DNA of 63,727 bases, filler included, from Reticulomyxa filosa (lineage: Eukaryota > Protista > Foraminifera): assembly GCA_000512085.1 (NCBI GenBank). It is 17 parts of 17 records of this genome, joined end to end, with 100 filler letters (N's around TTAATTAATTAA, not from the genome) between each part and the next. Parts side by side here need not be neighbours in the genome. Positions count along the whole stretch, not along the records: positions 26,172 to 38,071 come from ASPP01005846.1; 16 more parts are not named here. One strand, written 5' to 3'. The notes under the pieces were generated by a model. It had not been told where the DNA came from. It saw nothing but the letters and a program-made list of their open reading frames with translations, and made no database searches. The position numbers and the translations under genes were made by a program. Positions 26,172 through 38,071 of this stretch are shown here, piece by piece. The stretch's first letter is position 1; every line of letters begins with the position of its first letter.

Positions 26172-26457
26172 ACTCCTCTGCCTGAATCAACACTCGCAAA
26201 TACTTTTTGGTTTTCACATTTTGAAATTTCACTGACAATTGGCAGTCTTTGCTTGTACTACCCACTGGCTCCACTTTCCAGTGTGCATATTCGGATAGGC
26301 TTTGCTGTGCGTTAATTGTACTTGTCTCTTGTTCTAGACACCCGATATAGTGCTCTCTCGACAGCAAGTCACGCTCGGGCTGAAAACATATCGTTGCTGG
26401 CTTTACAAAGTCGTACGGCCTGAGAGCGGTAGGAGTTGTAGTAGTCATTTTATTCAA
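26172..26457 (-). CDS. 5' part of a protein with a probable fascin-like/beta-trefoil repeat
   Basis: ATG at 26457, open to the contig end. HWKVE..VKFQNVKTKKYLRV resembles a beta-trefoil strand pattern. Confidence 0.5.
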
Positions 26458-26955
26458 TTTGTTCTACCTCTCGCGGTAAAAAGTAAAAATAAAATAGTTT
26501 TTGATTCAAGCAAAAAATATTGTTCTCGATGATAATAATAATTAGATGCAATTTTTTTTTAAGTTCCCCGTCTTGACGGTTGTGTTTAATAATAAAATGC
26601 ATTAAATTAGTTTCATTTTTGTAAGGTATTTACTTGTATTTAAAATGCTGAACTTTTTTATGGATATTTTGCAATCTAATTTTAAAAATTTCACACTTGG
26701 TCATCACAAATGGACACTTTATTTTTCTTCATTTACAAAAAGGACAAGTAGATAGAGTTACACTATATACAATGAATGACACTGTTTATCAAATTTGACG
26801 CAGCAATTGAAACTAGAATGTTTAAGATTATTGACAAAGCTCTGTCTTTGCGTCTCTTAGCTATAAAATACCAAAAAATAAAGAAATTTAAGACGTCGAA
26901 GCAACCATTTTTATATTTTTTATGAAAGGGAAATCTCTAGTTAGTTAGGTAAATT

Positions 26956-29258
26956 TCAAAATGCTCCCCATAACCGGATTGTTTTATCGCTGCCAGATGA
27001 CACAACTGTGTTACCATCTGGTGAAATATCCACTCCTATTACGTAATTGGCAGAGCCTTCTAGTTTCTGAATTTCCACACCTAATTGTACATCCCATAAT
27101 CGGATTGTCTTATCTAATGAACATGACACAACAGTTTGTCCATCTGGAAAAAATTGCACATCTCTTATCGTAGCAGAATGTCCTGTTAAGCTTTTCAGCT
27201 CTTTTTTTGTTTTGTCATCCCATATTTTGATTGTTCCATCGCTTGAACAGGAAACAATAAAACGATTGCATGGAGAAAACTGTGCAGTCATGACATAACC
27301 TAAATGTCCTACCAACGTGTTTATTAGTTCACCTGATTTCACATCCCAAATGCCAATTGTATCATCGGAAGATGATGATACGAGTCGTTGGCCATCCGAT
27401 GAAAATTCTACATCATTTACCCAATTAAAATGCCCTTCCATTTTTTGTATCTCTTGTCCAGATTGAATATCCCATAACCGAATAGTTTGATCACAAGAAC
27501 CAGACACAACAATTTTTCCGTCTGGTGAAAACTCGGTTGATGTTATGCTATTCGAATGCCCTCGCCACATTCGTATTTCTGAACCTGATTTCACATCCCA
27601 CAATCGTATTGTTCTATCAAGCGAACACGACACAACCATATTTCCATCTGGTGAAAATTGGGCATCATAAACAGAAAGCACGTGTCCTTTCAATACTTGG
27701 ATTTGTTTTCCTAATTTGGCATCCCATATGACAATTGTTCCATCTTCAGAATGTGAAAGAATCTTGCTTCCATCAGGTGAAAATCTTACACCATATACAA
27801 TTCCGGTATGTGCTTCAAGAATTTTTAATGGTCTGAAATATTTCATCTGTATTTCTTTTAGAATATATTATCTCCAAAAAAAAAAAAAAAGAAAAAAACA
27901 AATCCAAATGTACCAGAATGTATCTCGAAATAATGATATTGAAATCCTCGATCCATCCCATTTTGATAAATGATGAGTGAATCCAATATTCGATTATCAT
28001 TGTAATTTCTCTTTTCCTCTTATATATACATGTATGAAAAAATGCATTTTTTTGTCCAATTCAATATCACAAGGTAAATTAAATATACAAAAATCTTTCA
28101 TCTAACCTTCCATTTTTTAACATCAAAATCTTCTTTCATTTCGATCAGTTCGTTTTTGATTTTTTCTAAATATTTTTTCTCTTCTTCTTCTGTTTCCCAT
28201 TGTATCTCTTTTTCTGTTTCTTCTTGCAGCCATTCCTTCACGTTCGTTTTCATGTGTACTGATTCTATCGCATCTCCGTCATATCCGCCAATTATATGCA
28301 GAAACATATTGTGTTCATGCAATACTGCAACAAGATGAGTCAATGGACTGGGCAAATTATTTTCAAATTTCATCCATGTATTTTCCGTTATTGAATACCG
28401 ATGAATTTCTGTTGAAATGCTGCAATCAGAGTCTCCACCAAAAAATAAAATAAAGCCATTGATGCAAATATATCCATAGGAATAAAGCTGTCTAATACTT
28501 GTGCAAACCCATACTTTGTGAAACTGAAAAACGTTGTTATCTTCATCATATTCAATTGACAATCCTACATTTTTATAAAATAATAGCATTTCGTGCACCT
28601 TTTCATCTGTGAAATTTCTTGCTGATCCCTTTCCTATCTTTGGCACAAAACAATGATACTGAATACAGGCGTCGTCAATTGGTAAATTAGCTTGCTTCAC
28701 ATGTTGGAATGTATTCAAATCAAATACATGAATGTTATTTGGACAATGTGTGATAAACAATAAATGATTTTTGCTTCCACCAACAAATGCACGTGCTCCA
28801 GTATAATCATCTTCATTCCTGCCAATGGAAACGGGTTTATTGTCTTTGTCAACGAAAGGAATCCATTCGTTACAATGTTCCATTTTTTTTATTTCATTGC
28901 TGTTATCCCAAACACTAACATATTTCATCATTAATGTATGTTTTTTCTGTTTTTTTCCTTGTCCACCAAAAGACAACAAAGTGATGGCATTTGCGTCTTG
29001 GCTGTTGTTTATAAGCTCCACCACACAATGTCCGTTTAATCCAGCACCCTTTGGATAAGAACAGATGGCCCTGTACTCATTTTTAAGTATATGGTATGAA
29101 TAGCAGCTCCTTTCCCAAATACTTCCACAAACGAGGATTTCATGTTTGTAGATCACACATTGAGTTTTCTGAAGCGGAACTGGGAAAAAAGCTAACGCTT
29201 CAAAGGAAGTTGCCCGCATATTTTCAGTTTCTCTAATTTTCATGTCATTTGTATCCAT
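26956..29258 (-). CDS. Kelch-like propeller + 7xWD40 protein (exons 29258-28107, 28018-27914, 27846-26956)
   Basis: Kelch-like TQCVIYKHEILVCG, GHCVV, LLSFGG, ILFFGG, LHIIGG. Linker MGWIEDFNIIISRYIL. Seven GH..FSPDG..IRLWD repeats. Phase-0 GT-AG introns. Confidence 0.93.
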
Positions 29259-30066
29259 CAAAGTAATAAAGACAAATAAATCTGGAGGCTTCAGGTATTC
29301 AAGAGAAAGATGATATATATATATAATAGCTCAGGGTTTTGAAAAAACTGGAACTTTGAACGCCTTAACACAAGATAGGTAATAAAAAGGTCAATTGCAC
29401 AATCTCAGTTTTGAACAATCATTTTCAACCAGCTATCTCAATTTTTTCTATCTTTTACGTAGGTGCATGCATATACATTATATTTTGTTTATTAAAAAGC
29501 CATTTTTTGTAGTTTATGTGAGTTTAAAACAATTTTTTTTGACTGTACACTATTAGTTGTATTTGTGACCAAAGAATATTTGACAGCGTACACGAAAAAT
29601 CGATAATATCATAAAAGGTAGAAATTTATCCGATATATTTTTCCAGAACTTTATATGAATGTCAGCCCAAGCTTCAAAAAAGAGTAATCGGATAATTACT
29701 AGCAAATGCCCAAAGGTTATTGATCAATTCAATGCATCAGCTTTGTTTCATCTTAATACTCTCATTTCAGAAGACATCCAACATAAAACAAAAAAATTAT
29801 TTACAAAACACAACCACAAAAATAGAGTGCATTTCTTTACTTTATTTATGCTATTATTATATAATTGCATTTAATATGCCAATATTCATTTATTTAAAAA
29901 ATAAATTTTATTAAACGGAAAAAGTTTTAAATAACACCTATCTAATTTGACCAGCAAAAACAATAATACGTTTTTCCATTTGGGAAAAAATGTAATAGAT
30001 AGTATTATTTCTTTTGATTTGCATCAAATCCCAAGTAAAAATAGGGATGTGATGAATATTTGCTAA

Positions 30067-33000
30067 TCATTTGCGGCCTTTCTTTTTTGAATTTTTATTT
30101 TGAGTTAAATATTCGCAAGCTTCATTTGGAACTTGGTACGGGATATAAAACCAATCTCCAAAAAGGCAGTTACACATATATTGCATAACTTGTTCATGAT
30201 TTGAATTCTTGTTCGAAAAAAAAGAGTAATTTTTCATGTGACTAGGTATTACTTGTTCATGAAGTACATCTCCAAGCAACGTGTTTTCACAACTGTTATG
30301 AAATTTACTAGGAACGCCCATAGAATTAACAAAGAATTCGACAGTTTTTAGTATTTTCCGAACGGATTTGATAATGCAAATATCCACTGAGTGAATGTAT
30401 CGGTTACTCATCGCACGACCTCCTAACAGCAATTCGTGAATGTATTTTTCTAAAAAAAATTGATCGCATTGATATACAAACGGAGAAAAGGAGTGATTGA
30501 TTCGATGCATCGATCGAATCGATTTAAAATGAATCAATGGATCTTTCATCATGTTATAAATAAAATCATTGATTAAATCCATTATGTAAGGAATTCTACA
30601 AATTAAACATTATTTATTTTATTTTTTCTTTATTATAGTTTATGTATCTTTCAAAAAAAAAAAAAAAGAAGAAGAAACAGGGCATTTTAATGAATTGTAG
30701 TTTGAATGAAGCAAACCTTTGTTTACATGCAAAAGCACCAGCTAAAAAAGGCCAACCTCCATAAGTATCACTCGTTAGCGAGAATTGCTCGCTGTTTTTT
30801 ACAATGGACGATTCAGGACCAAAAAAAAAAGGGTTGTCGTAATGATGACAATAATATCGATGAAATGGCTTATTTGAATTTTTAACCCAATCTGTTAAGT
30901 GCGTGTGATCGTTTATATTGTAAATGCTGTCAATATCACGGATACAAACAAAAGACTTTGGCCTTTTTTCCAAAATGGGATCACCCAATGCCTCCAAACG
31001 ACACAGCGTGCCAAAAAGACTTCGTAAGTGCAGTTCATCCCAATTGGAATTTACGATCGTTTCTCTGCAGCGTATTTGCGTGTAGTCCATTTCATACAAT
31101 TGCACACGGGGATGACAGCGCAAAAAAGATAAGAGTAAATTGCATAATTCATCCTTCACTACTGATTTGTCATAATAATAACGAAACACATAATCTACAT
31201 CTGTGATTTCAATTTTTATTAATTTTTGTTGTTATTATATCGCAAAGATTTTTTGTTATGAATGTACATTTTTTTTTTTTTTTTTTTTTTTTTATTGCAA
31301 TTGGATTTCATTCCAAGGGGTTGAATGTGTTACTCACCGTCAGATATGATCGATTCAAATTGATGGAGATTTCGTATGATCCCGGTAATGTACTGGATTC
31401 CCCCTCCAAAGTTTCGCAGCGCAGTTGATTCATAAGAAATGAAAAACGAATAGCTATAGAGATAAATAGGTCGATTAGAATGTTTAGAGAAGGCATGCTT
31501 TGCCAATTGGCCTTGGTGCACCAGTTTACAGCATCCATATTTATGGGAGTCCTCCGGACGATAGCCGTCCAACGGCATCGCCAATTCTTCGATTAGCGAA
31601 TGTGAGTAATGAATACATGAGTACACATCAAAGTACGACAGACAGTCGAACGAACCGATTGTACTTCGCTGACAATAGTCGAGAAGCCCATACTTTAGAA
31701 AATAGTAGTTTAATTGCCGAGGATCGCAAACAATACATTTCCAATTTTTCAAAGTCAATCGATTTTCAATTTTTTTCCATTTTTTGCGATTGACAATAAA
31801 TAGCAGGCAACTTTTGCAAAACGCAAACAATCGACGTTCGGCTCTATTTTTATTTCATTTAGCAGGAACGACAACATGGATCAAAAGAACAACGGTGATT
31901 GTTTGTTTGTTTGTTTGTTTATTTACAACTAATTTGATCTAGGTTTTGGATAGTGACAAAATACACAACTTTGGACTTTTGATAGAAATGCATCCATTTG
32001 ACGCCGAGCAATGAAAAACTGGCATAAAAGGTTCATCTACGTTGCTAATTCCGCACAGCCGGCAGTAATAATCATGCGAATATGATGTACTACATCTACG
32101 GTTGTGCTTGGTTTGATCAACCGATTCCGAGTCGCTTTCGTCTTGCTCTTCGATGCTTTGCCATAGCCATGGGTTTTCACTCAAATTCATTGTCCCTTTG
32201 ACGGTGTAAAAGTCATAGCAATTTGCACAAAGCTGTAAGCGGCATTTGGCATCCAGCAAAGTTGAAAACGGATGTGGTTTCAACTCCTTCAACAAATACC
32301 AATCGTGACATATCCAACACGGATGTCGCTCCACATGCATTCGATACTCGTCACAATATTTAAATTCATCTACACATGCATGTACACATATGTTTGTATG
32401 TTTATTCATTTCTTTTTTTTTTTATTTTTATTTTTATTTTTAAAATGTTGTTCCCAATGTGTTTTTAAATCTTCTACTTGTTCCAAAGTTTGAGTTTCGA
32501 AATCAATAATGTTTGTATGATTGTTAGAGTGGTGAAACCTGGAAGGAAGGGTTGCAAAATGGGCGGGCAAGGACTGGCACAGTCCTTAAGCATAGGCAAG
32601 CAATGCAAGTCGCGCGTGTTGGGGGATTGAGATGAAAAGGACCAGAAATTCGGATCCGAGGATGAACACTCTGCCAATGCAGGCGCCCACATTTCATTGG
32701 GACAAGTTGAATTGGGGTCGAAATAATACACTTGATCACTGGCTTCATCATACACTTCCACCGTCTTTTTCGTGTCAACTGTAATAGGTACTATTGACAA
32801 GTTCATGATGATATTGTGGGCATGTCTTGGATGGATTCGCAGTCTTGGATCGTCATGACAAAATTGCATCTCCACAATGACATTGGCCAAATTGAATCGA
32901 ACAGTTATCCATTCATTGATACTGACAACCATTCCCAATACCCATAAATTACGACAATCACTACTCACATACATCTCATGTGTATTATCACTGTTGCAAT

Positions 33001-33893
33001 TTTTATCTGTGGCTTCAATTGATTCACTCCACGCAAAAAATTCGTCGTGTGCGGCAGGACCGTATTCTTGCACTTGAATGTTGTGCTTGCGACACCAGGA
33101 CACATAAGCTGGGTTAATATGAACGTACACTGGACAACCGGGCCTTGCAATTAAACCCCATATCTGCACACACCACCACTGCGAAGTAAAGATTATAATC
33201 GAATTCCCGTCCTTGTCCTGATACAACGGGTCTTCGCTTACATAATTTCCTGCTAATGAGTCCTCAAACAAGTCTATCTGTTCCTTTGGTATCAACTCTT
33301 TTTGATGATACCGCAAAGGATAGTGCTTCAAGTCAAATATGTTCTCCTTCACCAACGACCTTTTTTGTGGTTGTCTCCAGGGAATTTTGTCTTCTTTTTC
33401 ATCACTTGTCTTGCCGTTTGACAATATCTCTACTTCATCTGACTTGTTTTCTATCCTTTTTTTTTTTTGCTGACAAAGCAAAAAAGAACAGCACTGTTTT
33501 TGATTGGTTGCGCATGATAACGTTTTACACCAAGTAACAGCCAAAAAAAAAAAAAAAGGTTTGTGTTGTTTTTTTTTCTCTCCCCCTCTCGTGTTCTGAA
33601 CACGATTTAAGAAAAATAAAACAATAAGAAAATAAAAAATAAAAAGAAAACCAGCTAGTACCACGGCTATAGCTGTTGTCTATTCCTTGTGCATTCTTGT
33701 TACATGCTGCCGGGTCATCACGTAACAAATCCGTTCTTCTGCTTCGTGGAAAATATGCCGCTGTGCTATGCTTTGTATTGTCAAGTTTTTTTGTGGATGT
33801 CTTACGCTTTTTGCGTGGTGGTTCCGCTTCGTCTATAGTGTGGGTATGCTCAGCAGATTTGCGCGTTCTCTTCCGTGAACATTTTGATTCCAT
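30067..33893 (-). CDS. 6-exon protein: basic N-terminus, WW-like motif, ADD zinc finger, C-terminal DxD glycosyltransferase-like domain
   Basis: ADD ligands in order CWIC..HP..LCANCYDFY..YCRLCG..CSASNGC..AFCKSCL..WKCIVCDP. Then YSYSFF..YITGIIRN..FRYYYD..GTLCRL..IRDIDS..DW..KPFH..FLAGAF..YQCDQFFLEKYI. All five introns are GT-AG and phase-compatible (1,1,2,1,2). Confidence 0.85.
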
Positions 33894-34199
33894 TTCAGTG
33901 GGAGAGTTCAGTCAAAACCCCAAAAAGTCGACTCCGTTTTTTTTTGAAGTACTGGTTGGCCCAGCGAGTGTTTTTCAAGAAAAAGAGCCCTTTTTGAAAG
34001 TTTTTACACAAACACAATATGCCAGACAATGACTATGTGTGACTGAGAGAAGTTTATTACAAGTAGAGGCTTTTTGCTTGTCACATCGAAAAAAGTGCAC
34101 ATCGAAAAAGCTAAGTGAACAAAACTAGTTCATATATTGAAAAAGGTCTAAATACTAATTTGGTTCCTCAGAACTGGTGATCCTTCAGAAGTTCATACA
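33894..34199. promoter_or_regulatory. Putative bidirectional promoter between divergent genes
   Basis: 306 bp between ATG 33893 (-) and ATG 34200 (+). Direct repeat CACATCGAAAAA at 34082-34093 and 34098-34109. Confidence 0.5.
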
Positions 34200-36228
34200 A
34201 TGTCGTTCGATAACAGACCGCCAAAATTCTTAAAGAAAAAAGTATACGCAAATTTCGACGACATAATTTCTTTCTTTGACACTTATTTAGCACTGGTAGA
34301 AGAATGCGAAAAGAAATTTGAAGAAAACTGGGTAAGTTAACCAAGAGTACACGTATATAAACATGTGTGTAACTCGAACGTCATACAGTCAAACAAGTTT
34401 GTTCAATTGGAAGTAATTGATATGTGAAAAGTTTGACAAATGCACAATCTGGCATCGAAATGTGTTTGTAATAGACGTTTTGCTACGAACTCGTAGTAAA
34501 TGTAGATGATCAGTTCTACAGCTGTATACTAAAGATAGCCCAAGCAAAGTTACGAGAGCTGGACGCGAACCTTCATGTGAGTGGTCAACATTATTATTTG
34601 TATGAGCACAACAAAAAAAAATTTTTCCTTCCCCCAAAAGTACACACCAAAAAAAAAAGAAATACACAAATATAAATGTAAATGTATACATACACTTATT
34701 TATTTACAAACAAAACTGAACAAAAGTGCAGTCAAACAACGGGGAATATTGTTTCGCAACTAAGGGTTACCCAAAGCTGCCAATAAACCATGATTTAAAA
34801 AACAATCTCAAGACAACGGAAAAATACATGAAGCAGTTGCAAGAATTGGAGAGCGAATCCAAACTCCTTTGTTACCCGATATTACCAAAGATACATTCAC
34901 TTCGAGGTCCTACTGTGAATGACTATCAGCTCATTTTAAAGTTTAGATATATTTATATATATATGTATATATTCCCTCTTTCAAAGTTCTTTGGGCATGT
35001 TTGTGATGGCATTAATAAAAATCAATAGCTATTTGCAACACTGCTTCAGTTCACCACAGCTTCTGAGAAAGCCATGGTTTTGGAATTTTTTTTCTTTGAC
35101 AAACGGCATAAGCAAGGACGGAGATGTGTTTAGAGATGTTAAGCGCATCCTTGAACAGCGAGCGCAGACAAAAATGTTGCAATTTAGGCAAATCTACGGC
35201 CGCGCCCACTTAAGGCTCTCCAGCTTGTATGTTCAAACTCTGAAAAAAAAAAAAAATAAAAAGTACAATATTTGTTTATTTGTTTTGGAGTCAACCTTAC
35301 TCCCCCTCCACATACTTTCAGATGACGTATATACACTCTATTAAAAAAAAAAAAAAAAAATAATAATAATAATAAAAAAGACTTGAATTGAATTCAGAGA
35401 CCTTTCGAACAGCGTTGATCGGATACCGAGAATTGGAAAGGGGCCCTCGGCAGGTGCCAACGGCGAAGCATTGGTGCTTAAACTTTATCGGAACAAAGTT
35501 GCTGCGGGTCGAGTTTTTCAGTGATTCTGGTGTAGTGATATTCCTGTTTGAAAACTCCAGAGAAAGTCGACGCGTGTTTTGGTATCATTGGAATGACAGC
35601 AGAGGAGATTTTACCAAGCGATGGAAGGTTTTTTCTCTTAAACCTATTATCAATCTCAGTGGTATTGCTTTCATTTTTTTTTTTTGCAAATGATCACTCC
35701 ATTTATACATATATGTATATATTCAAAAACAAAGGAAAGGAAATTGGCTCATGGCTATACTTATGGCGACAATACCACGGACAGTATCATCCTTTGCAAA
35801 ATAACTGTCAACACTTTGTTCGTGATATCATCAGTGCCATCGACGAAAAGGTGGCCAATCAATTGATATCGCTGATGGATCATCACAGTGTTACTGCTCT
35901 ATTGCCTCCATTGTTTTACTCCGATTATTGGGACGAAAAAATGCGCACTCGCGAAATACGCAATTTCTTGCTGAGCAAAGGCCCGGTTGTACTTCGTCTG
36001 TGGAAACAGAAGGACGCGGAACAGGATCACAAGTCCAATGGACCATCCACTGCTCGTTCGCAACTTGGTGCGGAACCCATTGCCCCTTCAAAACCGGAGC
36101 CAATGACTTTACCTCTGCCACTCGAACGGAACAATTCATCAGTTCAACACAAATCAAATTCGGATTATGTTTATTCTTTACTTTTTCAAAAAAAAGATTT
36201 GGAAAAAACAGCAATTACTTTGCTTTAA
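34200..36228 (+). CDS. PX-like domain + permuted papain-fold (PPPDE/LRAT-like) domain protein, multi-exon
   Basis: HWCL (catalytic His candidate) and YHPLQNNCQHF (catalytic Cys motif). N-terminal CYELVVNV..LRELDANL..PILPK..YLQHCFSSPQL..FWNFF is PX-like but degenerate. Confidence 0.65.
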
Positions 36229-36721
36229 ATAATTTTTTTTTTTTTTTTTTTTTCTTTTTAGAGACACTTTTTGGTTGGTTTGTGAAATTTTTTTTTTTTC
36301 ATCATGACTGCGTTGTCTGTGGACCCAATGTGTAACCGTCTCTCCTAGGCCACTCCACTACTGTATGCTCTTGGATCAGAGAGAGGACTAAATAATTCAA
36401 CTTATTGTAATTTGTTGCTTCTTTTTCTCTTATTTTTTTCTCTGGAAGATTACTCTCCAAAACAGGCATTTTAAAGATATCCCCAGATGTCATACTGATA
36501 AACAAACTTATTAGGATTTTCAAAAAATATCTATATATGTGCATGTGAAAACCAAATAGCAATTGTATTACTGGACAAAACAATTGCCGCAAAAAAAAAA
36601 AGAGCTTTGTAAGCCTGAACGTCAAAGGGGGGGAGGGCGGATGAATGGAAGACGGGGAAAGTTGGAAATATTATTATGCCAACAGGGCTGACGGCCTAAT
36701 CCCATAATCGTATATTATACA

Positions 36722-36881
36722 ATGTCCTTAAAAAGAAGCAGATCTGGACAAGCGCGACTGTTGTCGTCACAAAAGTATAAAGGGTTGGGAACGAGTTCAG
36801 TAAGGTCAACTTTTGTTCGTCGTAAAGACGAGATAAGGCCAAATGTCTGTTACCATGCGAAGGCATATTTTTCGCAGCAGA

Positions 36882-36915
<34 letters not shown>

Positions 36916-38071
36916 GCAGCAGCAAAAGCAGCAAGCGATGACATCAGCGTTGGCGAGAGGAGTGAGAGCAGCGACGACGACAACGAATGAGATGATCGAG
37001 ATGATCCAATGGATGATAATGTATGCAACGAATGCAGGGATCCGAAGAATGACAAAAGAGGAGTTGTCGAAGCACAATCGTTGGTTGCACACAATCGACC
37101 GACATTACTACGCATTGTTCGCAGAAGCGAAGGAGTCAAAAGAGCAAAGCGAAGCAAGACAGCAAAGAAGCTCGGGCATATCGAAGAGCACAGCAGAAGA
37201 GCGAGTGCGTGAGTCAATAGACGTATTATTGGATATGTTTCAATACACACATTATTATTATTGGAGTTATAAACGTTTGTATGAAGTGTTATCAAAGAAT
37301 GTATTATCATCATCATCATCATCATCATCATTATCATCACTATCATCATCATCATCATCATTATCGAATGTGGGTACCATGGCCACATTTCTGCACGACC
37401 TGCACGTGGACCAGGTGTATTTGCACTTGTATCAAATCAGCTTATACGACCTGGGTGACGTGGACCTGTCGTTTCGAATCATGACACACTGGCTGAGTCA
37501 TGGTTTCCATATCCACTTTCTTTCGGAGCACCATATGTTGGGAGCGAGTTCATTTGGCCAGCGTTATTTGGTGACCCATGAAAACGCAGACGACGCCACA
37601 TCCGAGCACAATCGTGAACGTGAGCATGAACATGACCATGAATTGCTATTGTTCGGACAAGAGGACAGAGTGAGAAAGACTTGTGCGGCCAATGTCATCT
37701 CAAAGTTGCGATGGCTGAGATTCGGAGACCGACCAGAATATCTCCTTCGCACCATGTATATCACGTCAATGTTCCACTTGCTATCGACCCGTCCGCGGAC
37801 TTGGTCGAAATGTATCGGACAACGTCCATACATTTTGCCATACTTTGAACAGGACAACTCAACAACATCATCACCCAATGTCACTGCTACGGATGCTACT
37901 GCTCTTCTTGTCCTGTGGACTCACTTGCAGCAGTATTTCCATTCGTCCAGTCTTGTCGATACCATCAGAAGAGCCCTCCTTTCTTGTCTCGTCAAAGATC
38001 GTGAAAGACATCGCGTTCAGCTTTCTGCAGGCCAACAATCCAACCAAGTGAAGTTCCATTACCCCCCCCCC
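36722..38071 (+). CDS. Uncharacterised protein with poly-Q, poly-S and HE repeats, 3' truncated
   Basis: 450-codon open frame from ATG 36722 to the contig end. No family recognised. Confidence 0.7.

What the first reader, a model, noticed from the sequence alone, without database searches (positions are those of the whole stretch)
30067..32370. ADD histone-reader finger fused to a glycosyltransferase-like domain: candidate chromatin/DNA glycosylation system
Seen: the 12 Cys ligands of an ADD domain in ATRX-like spacing (CWIC, HP, CANC, CRLC, C..C, AFCKSC, WKCIVCDP). These run within a single exon (31843-31338) into YSYSFF..YITGIIRN, so the fusion does not depend on my splice model. The frame continues to GTLCRL..IRDIDS (DxD at 30940-30926)..FLAGAF..YQCDQFFL. 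Established: ADD domains read the H3 tail (H3K4me0, plus H3K9me3 in ATRX) and are normally coupled to a DNMT3 methyltransferase or a SNF2 ATPase; neither catalytic motif set is present here. DxD after a hydrophobic strand is the hallmark of GT-A transferases, and DNA-base glucosylation is known (base J in kinetoplastids, glucosyl-hmC in T-even phage). Inference: the C-terminal motif order recalls a poorly characterised GT-A-like family (S.SL.G..Y..G...N / RD.DS / GG.WG / DQ.FL) that I recall from bacteria and giant viruses. The protein may be a chromatin-targeted sugar transferase acting on DNA bases or histones. The basic N-terminus (PPRKKRK) fits nuclear localisation and no signal anchor is visible.
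Basis: partly seen in the sequence, partly recalled or inferred. Interest (0 to 1): 0.82.

Follow-up and report, generated by a model that had tools for sequence, protein, structure and literature searches.

The report
Zinc-finger protein with possible sugar-transferase domain
A Reticulomyxa filosa (foraminifer) gene joins a three-zinc, ADD-like cysteine finger to an orphan domain that looks like, but is not proven to be, a GT-A sugar transferase; if both readings hold, it would be an undescribed way of aiming glycosylation at chromatin.

Summary
One uninterrupted exon (31843-31338) carries both the end of the cysteine finger and the start of the C-terminal domain. GenBank holds the core as hypothetical protein RFI_07334 (ETO29786.1) and splits the locus into three gene models. 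GT-AG introns with matching phases join them into one protein of about 1,020 aa.

- **Zinc module:** non-random (5 CxxC in 175 aa; P = 0.002 against shuffles). No profile confirms ADD identity: DNMT3 ADD-PHD E = 5.2, CDCA7-type zf-4CXXC_R1 E = 0.064, no PDB hit.
- **C-terminal domain:** no Pfam, NCBIfam, PHROGs or PDB hit. A HMMER search of 1.84 billion proteins found one relative, a 90-aa marine metagenome fragment. It conserves IRDIDSI and, past an intron, YCHHYDNPFF.
- **GT-A reading:** rests on one lead-level source. ESM Atlas neighbours are GT6, GT8, GT77 and PLOD-GT by features. By shape they are giant-virus hypothetical proteins (TM 0.65) and GNT-I (TM 0.58/0.65).
- **My AlphaFold models:** unusable (pLDDT 29 and 37.5).
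- **Not tested:** transcription, H3 binding and sugar transfer.

Interest is moderate: possibly a new architecture, weakly evidenced.

The parts
33662..33893 (-). Putative exon 1: start codon and basic N-terminus (MESKCSRKRTRK...PPRKKRK), an NLS-like cluster
   Evidence: Open frame and ATG seen; no hydrophobic segment. The link to the downstream exons is by splice model only; GenBank puts it in a separate 457-aa gene.
32539..33450 (-). Putative exon 2: about 300 aa of unknown function (the 5' boundary is uncertain)
   Evidence: 304 open codons. No Pfam, NCBIfam, PHROGs or PDB hit. The donor CCAG|GTTTCA at 32539/32538 is phase-compatible with the acceptor at 32370/32369.
31958..32369 (-). Exon 3: GATA-like C2C2 finger (CWIC..HP..CANC), a 51-aa acidic linker, and the first half of the PHD-like finger (CRLC..HCSASNGC)
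   Evidence: The donor at 31958/31957 is the one used by public model P0001.
31338..31843 (-). Exon 4: second half of the PHD-like finger (AFCKSC..WKCIVCDP), a linker of about 85 aa, then the start of the C-terminal domain (IYLYSYSFF..GGGIQYITGIIRN)
   Evidence: Single 168-codon open frame; same junctions in P0001. Weak profile hits fall here only: PF21255 E = 5.2 and PF10497 E = 0.064.
30717..31200 (-). Exon 5: core of the C-terminal domain
   Evidence: The only relative, P0002, is 42% identical over residues 59-125. Atlas neighbours are GT-A families.
30926..30940 (-). RDIDS: a DxD-type motif directly after the hydrophobic stretch SFVCI
   Evidence: IRDIDSI is invariant in the marine homologue.
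30824..30853 (-). YCHHYDNPFF: the most conserved stretch of the family; role unknown
   Evidence: 11 of 12 residues identical in TARA scaffold L002, across an intron that R. filosa lacks.
30731..30760 (-). GGWPFLAGAF: a glycine-rich stretch. It sits where GT8-type enzymes carry their NxG loop (placement from memory of those families).
   Evidence: position relative to DxD only, inference.
30067..30595 (-). Exon 6: last 175 codons plus stop, with CDQFFL at 30468-30451. GenBank annotates part of it as a separate 161-aa gene starting at an internal Met (30552).
   Evidence: Open frame and 7/8. The acceptor tgtAG|A at 30596/30595 is in phase with the donor AG|GT at 30717/30716. It lies 61 bp from the end of P0001. 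Chance of 175 open codons is about 2e-4.

Best explanation
This is one soluble protein of about 1,020 aa in Reticulomyxa filosa, probably nuclear, and over-split in GenBank into three models.

Its centre is a three-zinc cysteine module laid out like an ADD domain: a GATA-like C2C2 finger followed by a PHD-like C4C4 finger. After a linker of about 85 aa comes an orphan domain of about 380 aa. That domain most likely has the GT-A (nucleotide-diphospho-sugar transferase) fold. It uses the conserved SFVCI-RDIDS strand and DxD to hold a divalent metal and an NDP-sugar.

The likeliest mechanism is that the finger docks the protein on chromatin (a histone tail or DNA) and the C-terminal domain transfers a sugar to a nearby protein or base.

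- **Shown:** the motifs, the single-exon fusion, the non-random CxxC pattern, conservation of the DxD stretch in one other organism, and the lack of a membrane anchor.
- **Lead-level:** the GT-A fold.
- **Inferred only:** ADD identity, H3 reading, nuclear location, catalysis and substrate.
For: - **Fusion:** exon 4 is one open frame holding both parts, and public model P0001 has e3-e5 contiguous.
- **Zinc module:** 5 CxxC pairs among 15 Cys in 175 aa, none in the remaining 284 aa, P = 0.002 against shuffles. It matches an ADD-layout regex I wrote from memory of ATRX/DNMT3. The only Pfam hit for P0001:1-200 is the DNMT3 ADD PHD model, at the expected place (E = 5.2).
- **C-terminal domain, features:** for P0001:235-461, all ten best named neighbours belong to one GT-A clan (GT6, GT8, GT77/Nucleotid_trans, GT_PLOD at 0.88-0.90). 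GT8 was also seen for exon 5 alone.
- **C-terminal domain, shape:** the Atlas's own model of this region aligns 175-179 residues to giant-virus hypothetical proteins (TM 0.65) and to a GNT-I family cluster (TM 0.58/0.65).
- **Conservation:** IRDIDSI and YCHHYDNPFF are conserved in TARA fragment P0002/L002.
- **Secondary structure:** my low-confidence AF2 model gives beta-alpha-beta-alpha-beta at the domain start, as a Rossmann-like half needs.
- **Location:** no TM segment, and a PPRKKRK cluster.
Against: - No family profile or solved structure matches any exon at E <= 1. Neither ADD nor GT-A membership is statistically supported.
- The Atlas feature scores are at or under 0.90 with only about 100-114 shared features. 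The tool itself rates this as a lead, and says a third of shuffled proteins also get ten concordant hits.
- Features and shape count as one source, and both sides are predicted models (query model pTM 0.49).
- Several shape neighbours are bacterial proteins labelled only as TPR.
- My AF2 models failed (pLDDT 29.2 and 37.5). Fold searches on the second gave only generic Rossmann-like noise.
- The finger departs from ATRX/DNMT3 spacing, with a 51-aa linker between the fingers and a 19-residue loop before FCKSC. A CDCA7-type profile scores better than the ADD one.
- Joining e1/e2 and e6 to the core is a model only.
Confidence: 0.35

Rival explanations
1. The zinc module is a generic PHD-like or CDCA7-like cross-brace finger, not ADD. 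It would bind DNA, another protein or another histone mark. The C-terminal region is a lineage-restricted orphan domain whose resemblance to GT-A is superficial, with a different function (scaffold, hydrolase or other).
For: - The best profile hit on the finger is zf-4CXXC_R1 (E = 0.064), ahead of ADD (E = 5.2).
- There are no ATRX or DNMT3 hits in the PDB.
- The C-domain has one relative among 1.84 billion representatives and no family hit.
- The Atlas evidence is lead-level by the tool's own calibration.
- The AF2 model is not confident.
Against: - The zf-4CXXC_R1 hit covers only profile positions 33-63 of 99. The C-terminal CxCxxC cluster of that family is absent, and the next Cys are at 185 and 195.
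- A separate upstream C2C2 finger with an internal HP is an ADD feature, not a CDCA7 one (my knowledge of those families).
- The GT-A neighbours are concordant in two Atlas searches.
- The conserved strand plus DxD is what GT-A needs.
Confidence: 0.33
2. The C-terminal domain is a very degenerate DNMT3-type (class I Rossmann) methyltransferase-like domain. The protein would then be a DNMT3L-like ADD protein that has lost the catalytic motifs and acts as a regulator or reader rather than an enzyme.
For: - ADD is normally coupled to a DNMT3 methyltransferase domain (established knowledge).
- By eye, FGGGIQYITG resembles motif I, D-I-D-S-I..L-x-D-W resembles DNMT3A's GDVRSV..IQEW, and GGWPF resembles GG-x-PC with Cys replaced (sequence; the DNMT side is from memory).
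- The N-terminal beta-alpha-beta pattern fits any Rossmann-like fold.
Against: - No DNA_methylase hit at E <= 10 and no DNMT chain in the PDB searches.
- There is no PC dipeptide or ENV motif in the right spacing. The candidate motifs lie about 110-140 residues apart where DNMTs have 40-50.
- I could find two different by-eye matches to the same DNMT3A stretch, which shows how weak such matches are.
- None of the Atlas neighbours is a methyltransferase.
Confidence: 0.1
3. The three GenBank models are right. The finger protein ends in the poly-T read-through after ...ACKQRF, and the 161-aa and 457-aa products are separate genes, so there is no complete C-terminal domain and no basic N-terminus on the finger protein.
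For: - This is the public annotation.
- There are no transcript data to overrule it.
- The split-domain complementation test gave no answer.
Against: - The gaps between same-strand models are only 61-65 bp.
- The read-through tail (KMPCFFFFFFFFERYINYNKEKIK) is a translated polypyrimidine tract of 19% GC bounded by GT..AG.
- Exon 6 stays open for 14 codons upstream of the annotated Met, right up to an in-phase acceptor.
- Even if this rival were true, the finger-to-DxD fusion remains within P0001.
Confidence: 0.12

Closest known systems
ADD domain of ATRX, DNMT3A/B and DNMT3L (GATA-like finger, PHD finger and C-terminal helix; reads H3K4me0, plus H3K9me3 in ATRX)
   Same: - Twelve Cys in the order CxxC..HP..CxNC, then CxxC..C(x5)C..FCxxC..WxCxxC followed by (D/H)P.
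- A 23-residue stretch between FCKSC and WKCIVC, against 20-21 in ATRX and DNMT3A (from memory).
- An acidic residue three positions before the first PHD Cys.
- The module is followed by a possible helix, then an enzyme-like domain.
   Different: - No significant profile or PDB hit.
- A 51-aa acidic insert between the two fingers (about 19 aa in ATRX and DNMT3A).
- A 19-residue loop with an extra Cys before FCKSC (4 residues in ATRX).
- The partner domain is neither DNMT nor SNF2.
Retaining GT-A glycosyltransferases of the GT8, GT6 and GT77 type (LgtC, glycogenin, AgtA), and GNT-I (GT13)
   Same: - A hydrophobic strand followed by DxD.
- The helix before it carries R-L..L, as in GT8 (from memory).
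- The order is DxD, then L..W, then a Gly-rich loop, then DQ..L.
- Atlas feature and shape neighbours.
- Soluble, like the cytoplasmic Skp1 glycosyltransferases of protists.
   Different: - No HMM hit to PF01501, PF03414, PF03407 or PF03071, even at E <= 10.
- About 55 residues lie between the DxD and the Gly loop.
- No recognisable C-terminal HxxGxxKPW metal-binding motif.
- The N-terminal motif is not the D/N-x-x-Y of GT8.
JGT, the base-J glucosyltransferase of kinetoplastids (a GT-A-like enzyme acting on hydroxymethyl-uracil in DNA)
   Same: Precedent for a nuclear GT-A-type enzyme that glycosylates DNA in a protist (established knowledge).
   Different: No sequence relation was detected. 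JGT has no ADD finger. No TET/JBP partner could be looked for in this genome with the tools at hand.
CDCA7/CDCA7L zf-4CXXC_R1 (hemimethylated-CpG sensing zinc finger)
   Same: The FCxxC...WxCxxC stretch gives the best, still sub-threshold, Pfam score (13.9 bits against a cut-off of 22.7).
   Different: Only a third of the profile is matched. The terminal CxCxxC cluster is missing, and an extra upstream C2C2 finger is present.

Membership tests
ADD domain (ATRX-DNMT3-DNMT3L) | N-terminal GATA-like C2C2 zinc finger | tested here: inconclusive
   CWIC-x26-CANC with an internal HP is present. No hit of P0001:1-60 to PF17980 or PF17981 at E <= 10.
ADD domain (ATRX-DNMT3-DNMT3L) | Imperfect PHD finger (C4C4, two zinc ions) ending FCxxC...WxCxxC | tested here: inconclusive
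   The pattern is present (regex). PF21255 (DNMT3 ADD PHD) scores E = 5.2, 7.7 bits against a cut-off of 27. The loops are longer than in known members.
ADD domain (ATRX-DNMT3-DNMT3L) | Significant match to an ADD profile or to a solved ADD structure | tested here: not met
   Nothing at E <= 1 in Pfam. No ATRX or DNMT3 chain at E <= 10 in the PDB.
ADD domain (ATRX-DNMT3-DNMT3L) | Single globular fold in which both fingers pack against a C-terminal helix; H3 residues 1-10 bind as a beta-strand | not testable with these tools
   AF2 of exon 3 alone gave pLDDT 29. There are no homologues for an alignment.
GT-A glycosyltransferase fold | DxD (or equivalent) at the end of a hydrophobic beta-strand | tested here: met
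   SFVCI-RDIDS at 30955-30926. FVAIRDIDSI is in the only homologue. The strand character is inferred from hydrophobicity, not from a confident model.
GT-A glycosyltransferase fold | Alpha/beta/alpha sandwich with an N-terminal Rossmann-like nucleotide-binding half | tested here: inconclusive
   The Atlas ESMFold model of P0001:235-461 aligns to a GNT-I cluster (TM 0.58/0.65, 175 residues) and to giant-virus proteins (TM 0.65). My AF2 model reached pLDDT 37.5, with beta-alpha-beta-alpha-beta at the start only. Foldseek against the PDB gave no hit at E <= 0.001.
GT-A glycosyltransferase fold | Significant match to any CAZy or Pfam GT-A family profile | tested here: not met
   No Pfam, NCBIfam or PHROGs hit for any exon or for P0001:230-461. 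PDB profile search: nothing.
GT-A glycosyltransferase fold | Metal-dependent NDP-sugar binding and transfer | not testable with these tools
   Needs a biochemical assay.
DNMT3-type C5 cytosine methyltransferase | Motifs I (FxGxG), IV (PC), VI (ENV), IX and X in order and spacing; PF00145 match | tested here: not met
   No PF00145 hit at E <= 10. No PC or ENV in the sequence at DNMT spacing.
SNF2 ATPase (ATRX type) | SNF2_N and Helicase_C domains | tested here: not met
   No Pfam hit in any exon of the locus.
zf-4CXXC_R1 (CDCA7) | Four CXXC pairs plus a terminal CxCxxC, full-length profile match | tested here: not met
   13.9 bits against a cut-off of 22.7, profile positions 33-63 of 99 only. 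There is no CxCxxC after WKCIVC.

The most novel reading that the evidence does not exclude
A foraminiferal chromatin 'writer' of a kind not described before. An ADD-type histone-tail reader would be covalently coupled to a GT-A sugar transferase that glycosylates histones or modified DNA bases. It would belong to a tiny orphan family shared with marine relatives, and perhaps distantly with unannotated giant-virus proteins.
Probability: 0.18. Interest if true: 0.85.

Novelty: new variant of a known kind. Interest (0 to 1): 0.5.

Why it matters
Chromatin readers are known fused to methyltransferases, remodelling ATPases, acetyltransferases and ubiquitin ligases. I know of no ADD- or PHD-type reader fused to a GT-A sugar transferase, and full-text searches found none.

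If both domain calls hold, the protein would give a direct handle on targeted glycosylation of chromatin in a eukaryote outside the kinetoplastids. That glycosylation could be histone O-glycosylation or base-J-like DNA glycosylation. Foraminifera are a group with very unusual nuclear biology and almost no functional genetics.

If they do not hold, the locus is still a useful annotation correction: three GenBank models merged into one gene. It is also an example of an orphan domain family with only two detectable members among 1.84 billion protein representatives.

Tried and rejected
- **Family scans:** Pfam, NCBIfam and PHROGs on every exon and on P0001 slices gave nothing significant.
- **PDB sequence searches:** every exon, P0001:1-185 and the two-sequence profile gave only chance hits such as henipavirus G, antibody light chains and archaeal Rpo1C.
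- **Word-index protein searches:** exon 5, P0001:1-200 and P0001:235-461 found only the protein itself.
- **Full HMMER search with exon 5:** itself plus P0002.
- **Locus scans:** viral contigs and JGI metagenomes found no relatives.
- **Back-translated HHYDNPFF pattern:** 0 viral hits and 1 bacterial hit. The bacterial hit lies antisense inside a 1,425-aa Acetivibrio ORF, so it is chance.
- **tblastn against phage records:** only E = 5-7 noise.
- **AF2 of exon 3 alone:** pLDDT 29.2.
- **AF2 of P0001:245-461 with P0002:** pLDDT 37.5. Foldseek against the PDB and the Atlas shape search on that model returned generic GTPase, GT-B and Rossmann rows with TM 0.2-0.38. I treat these as meaningless.
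- **Complex prediction:** the exon 4/5 part against the exon 6 product, meant as a split-domain test of the gene merge, returned 'no answer'. This is no evidence either way.
- **Literature:** no paper mentions RFI_07334, ETO29786 or X6NUU3, nor an ADD-glycosyltransferase fusion.
- Exons were searched by reference, and the public model P0001 served as the contiguous e3-e5 reference. No search or fold covered exon 6 together with the rest of the domain.
- **T-even phage precedent:** considered and rejected as a close analogy, because those DNA glucosyltransferases are GT-B enzymes (established knowledge).
Full report
**Where it is**

The piece (window 26172-38071) is the reverse complement of Reticulomyxa filosa contig ASPP01005846.1, assembly GCA_000512085.1. 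It is AT-rich (27-46% GC) and carries spliced eukaryotic genes. Its neighbours are a WD40 propeller and a Kelch-like protein. The finding lies on the minus strand.

**Checking the observation**

RDIDS is exactly at 30940-30926.

The key structural claim holds. The stretch 31842-31339 is one open frame of 168 codons. It starts with AERRLFAFCKSC...WKCIVCDP and ends with IYLYSYSFFISYESTALRNFGGGIQYITGIIRNLHQFESIISD. The end of the cysteine finger and the beginning of the C-terminal domain are therefore in one exon.

From the sequence I infer these exons:
- e3: 32369-31958
- e4: 31843-31338
- e5: 31200-30717
- e6: 30595-30067

All introns are GT..AG, 114-169 nt long and 19-31% GC, with compatible phases.

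The e3/e4 and e4/e5 junctions are the ones used by the public model P0001. This is RFI_07334 / ETO29786.1 / X6NUU3_RETFI, 491 aa, annotated 'hypothetical protein'.

GenBank splits the locus into three same-strand models separated by only 61-65 bp:
- a 457-aa upstream gene (33893-32406);
- P0001 (32340-30614), which reads through the last intron into a translated poly-T tract;
- a 161-aa gene (30552-30067) that starts at an internal Met of my exon 6.

The in-phase splice sites, the tiny gaps and the nature of the read-through tail make a single gene of about 1,020 codons more likely.

The PPRKKRK cluster is real (33893-33662). It belongs to the finger protein only if the e2/e3 splice is real. 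No 19-residue window is hydrophobic enough for a signal anchor (maximum 1.33).

**The cysteine module**

In the first 175 residues of P0001 there are 15 Cys forming five CxxC pairs, plus C111-x5-C117. The remaining 284 residues have 12 Cys and no CxxC pair. Shuffles of the same 175 residues reach five pairs in 0.2% of 20,000 trials. A zinc-binding module of about three zinc ions is therefore close to certain.

Its layout is CWIC-x26 (with HP)-CANC, then a 51-residue acidic linker, then CRLC-x14-C-x5-C-x19-FCKSC-x23-WKCIVC-DP. This is the ADD order, and some signature residues agree with what I remember of ATRX and DNMT3A: HP inside the first finger, CxNC..(F/Y), AFCKxC, WxCxxC(D/H)P. That comparison is from memory and is a lead, not a test.

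The tests I could run do not confirm membership.
- Pfam gives nothing at E <= 1.
- At E <= 10, the only hit for P0001:1-200 is the DNMT3 ADD PHD model at residues 135-167 (E = 5.2, 7.7 bits against a cut-off of 27).
- On shorter slices, the CDCA7-type zf-4CXXC_R1 model scores better on the same stretch (E = 0.064, 13.9 bits against 22.7). It covers only a third of that profile, and the family's terminal CxCxxC is absent.
- phmmer against all PDB chains finds no ATRX, DNMT3A or DNMT3L chain at E <= 10.
- The word search found no relatives.
- AF2 on exon 3 alone failed (pLDDT 29).

I rate 'ADD-type' at roughly 55% and 'some PHD-like cross-brace finger' at about 95%.

**The C-terminal domain**

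No exon hits Pfam, NCBIfam or PHROGs or the PDB.

A full HMMER scan of 1.84 billion cluster representatives with exon 5 found the protein itself and one other sequence, P0002. P0002 is a 90-aa ORF on a 939-bp TARA Oceans scaffold.
- It is 41-42% identical over about 70 residues.
- It keeps FVAIRDIDSI.
- After an intron that R. filosa lacks, the scaffold continues with YCHHYDNPFFYG, 11 of 12 residues identical.
- An upstream ORF on the same scaffold plausibly matches the alpha1-beta2-alpha2 stretch. That match is by eye only.

So the family is real, eukaryotic and very small. The DxD strand and the HHYDNPFF stretch are under constraint.

Nothing else turned up. The viral contig scans, JGI metagenome scans, the bacterial and archaeal genome scan, and the phage tblastn all gave no relative.

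The only positive fold evidence comes from the ESM Atlas, which holds P0001 letter for letter (model pTM 0.49, mean pLDDT 0.52).
- **By language-model features, residues 235-461:** the ten best named neighbours all belong to one GT-A clan (GT6, GT8, GT77/Nucleotid_trans, PLOD-GT). Scores are 0.88-0.90 with only about 100-114 shared features. The tool calibrates this as a lead, and notes that a third of shuffled proteins also get ten concordant hits.
- **By shape:** the region aligns 176-179 residues to two clusters of Nucleocytoviricota hypothetical proteins (TM 0.65 by query). It aligns 175 residues to a GNT-I (GT13) cluster (TM 0.58/0.65). It aligns about 143 residues to bacterial proteins whose only Pfam label is TPR.
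- **Exon 5 alone:** also had GT8 among its feature neighbours.

These searches count as one source.

My own AF2 run on P0001:245-461 plus P0002 gave pLDDT 37.5. Its secondary structure starts beta-alpha-beta-alpha-beta, which fits any Rossmann-like half. The fold searches on it returned noise.

Read against what I know of GT8-type enzymes, the motif order is coherent. It runs: a helix with R-L..L, a hydrophobic strand plus DxD, L..DW, a Gly-rich loop, then DQFFL. The same sequence can, however, be read by eye onto DNMT3A motifs. I even found two alternative by-eye matches to one DNMT3A stretch, which shows how little such readings prove. No DNA_methylase profile or DNMT structure is hit, the PC and ENV motifs are absent, and no Atlas neighbour is a methyltransferase. 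I keep the DNMT3L-like reading as a 10% rival and put GT-A at about 55-60%.

**Mechanism**

The best-supported picture is a soluble protein, probably nuclear. Its three-zinc finger would tether it to chromatin. Its C-terminal GT-A-like domain would use the conserved DxD and a divalent metal to bind an NDP-sugar and glycosylate a nearby histone or DNA base.

Only the anatomy is shown. The fold is lead-level. Reader function, location, catalysis and substrate are inference. JGT of kinetoplastids is the nearest functional precedent. The T-even phage DNA glucosyltransferases are GT-B fold and so are not a close one.

**What was left out**

Exons were searched by reference, and P0001 gave e3-e5 as one reference. 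Exon 6 was therefore never searched or folded together with the rest of the domain. A split-domain complex test of exon 6 against the e4/e5 part gave 'no answer' and is not evidence either way.

**Verdict**

However, both domain assignments fall short of membership tests. Interest is 0.5. The novel reading, a chromatin-targeted glycosyltransferase, has about 18% probability and would be of high interest if true.

Noticed in passing
window 30067-33893 (L001 4179-8005): GenBank annotates three adjacent same-strand genes (457, 491 and 161 aa) with gaps of 61-65 bp. In-phase GT-AG splice sites join them into one gene of about 1,020 codons. The 491-aa model ends in a translated poly-T intron tract (…KMPCFFFFFFFFERYINYNKEKIK).
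   Followed up: partly
L002 1-939 (TARA_SAMEA6005692_METAG-scaffold_262998): This is the only detectable homologue of the C-terminal domain. It has an intron between ...IHRYY and YCHHYDNPFFYG that R. filosa lacks. An upstream ORF (97-333) by eye matches the alpha1-beta2-alpha2 stretch. The source organism is unknown, presumably a marine protist.
   Followed up: partly
window 32539-33450, minus strand: About 300 codons upstream of the finger contain Trp/Cys-rich stretches (SQWWCVQIWGLIARPGCPVYVHINP; NLWVLGMVVSINEWITVRFNL). By eye these recall Tudor- or PWWP-like barrels, but no Pfam, NCBIfam, PHROGs or PDB hit supports this.
   Followed up: partly
window 26956-27846 and 28098-29261, minus strand: A seven-repeat WD40 propeller (PF00400, E = 1.6e-81) and a Kelch-like beta-propeller protein (E = 4e-9) lie downstream on the same strand. 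The public annotation joins the WD40 part into a 717-aa model.
   Followed up: partly
window 35548-36228, plus strand: The ORF contains ...YHPLQNNCQHFVRDIISAID. By eye this recalls the Cys/His motif of PPPDE/DeSI-type peptidases. Pfam found nothing on the raw ORF, which is probably one exon of a spliced gene.
   Followed up: no
window 36722-38071, plus strand: A long open frame runs off the end of the piece. It has poly-Q and poly-Ser tracts and His/Glu-rich repeats. Its only hit is a weak TFIIA-like low-complexity match (E = 0.009).
   Followed up: no
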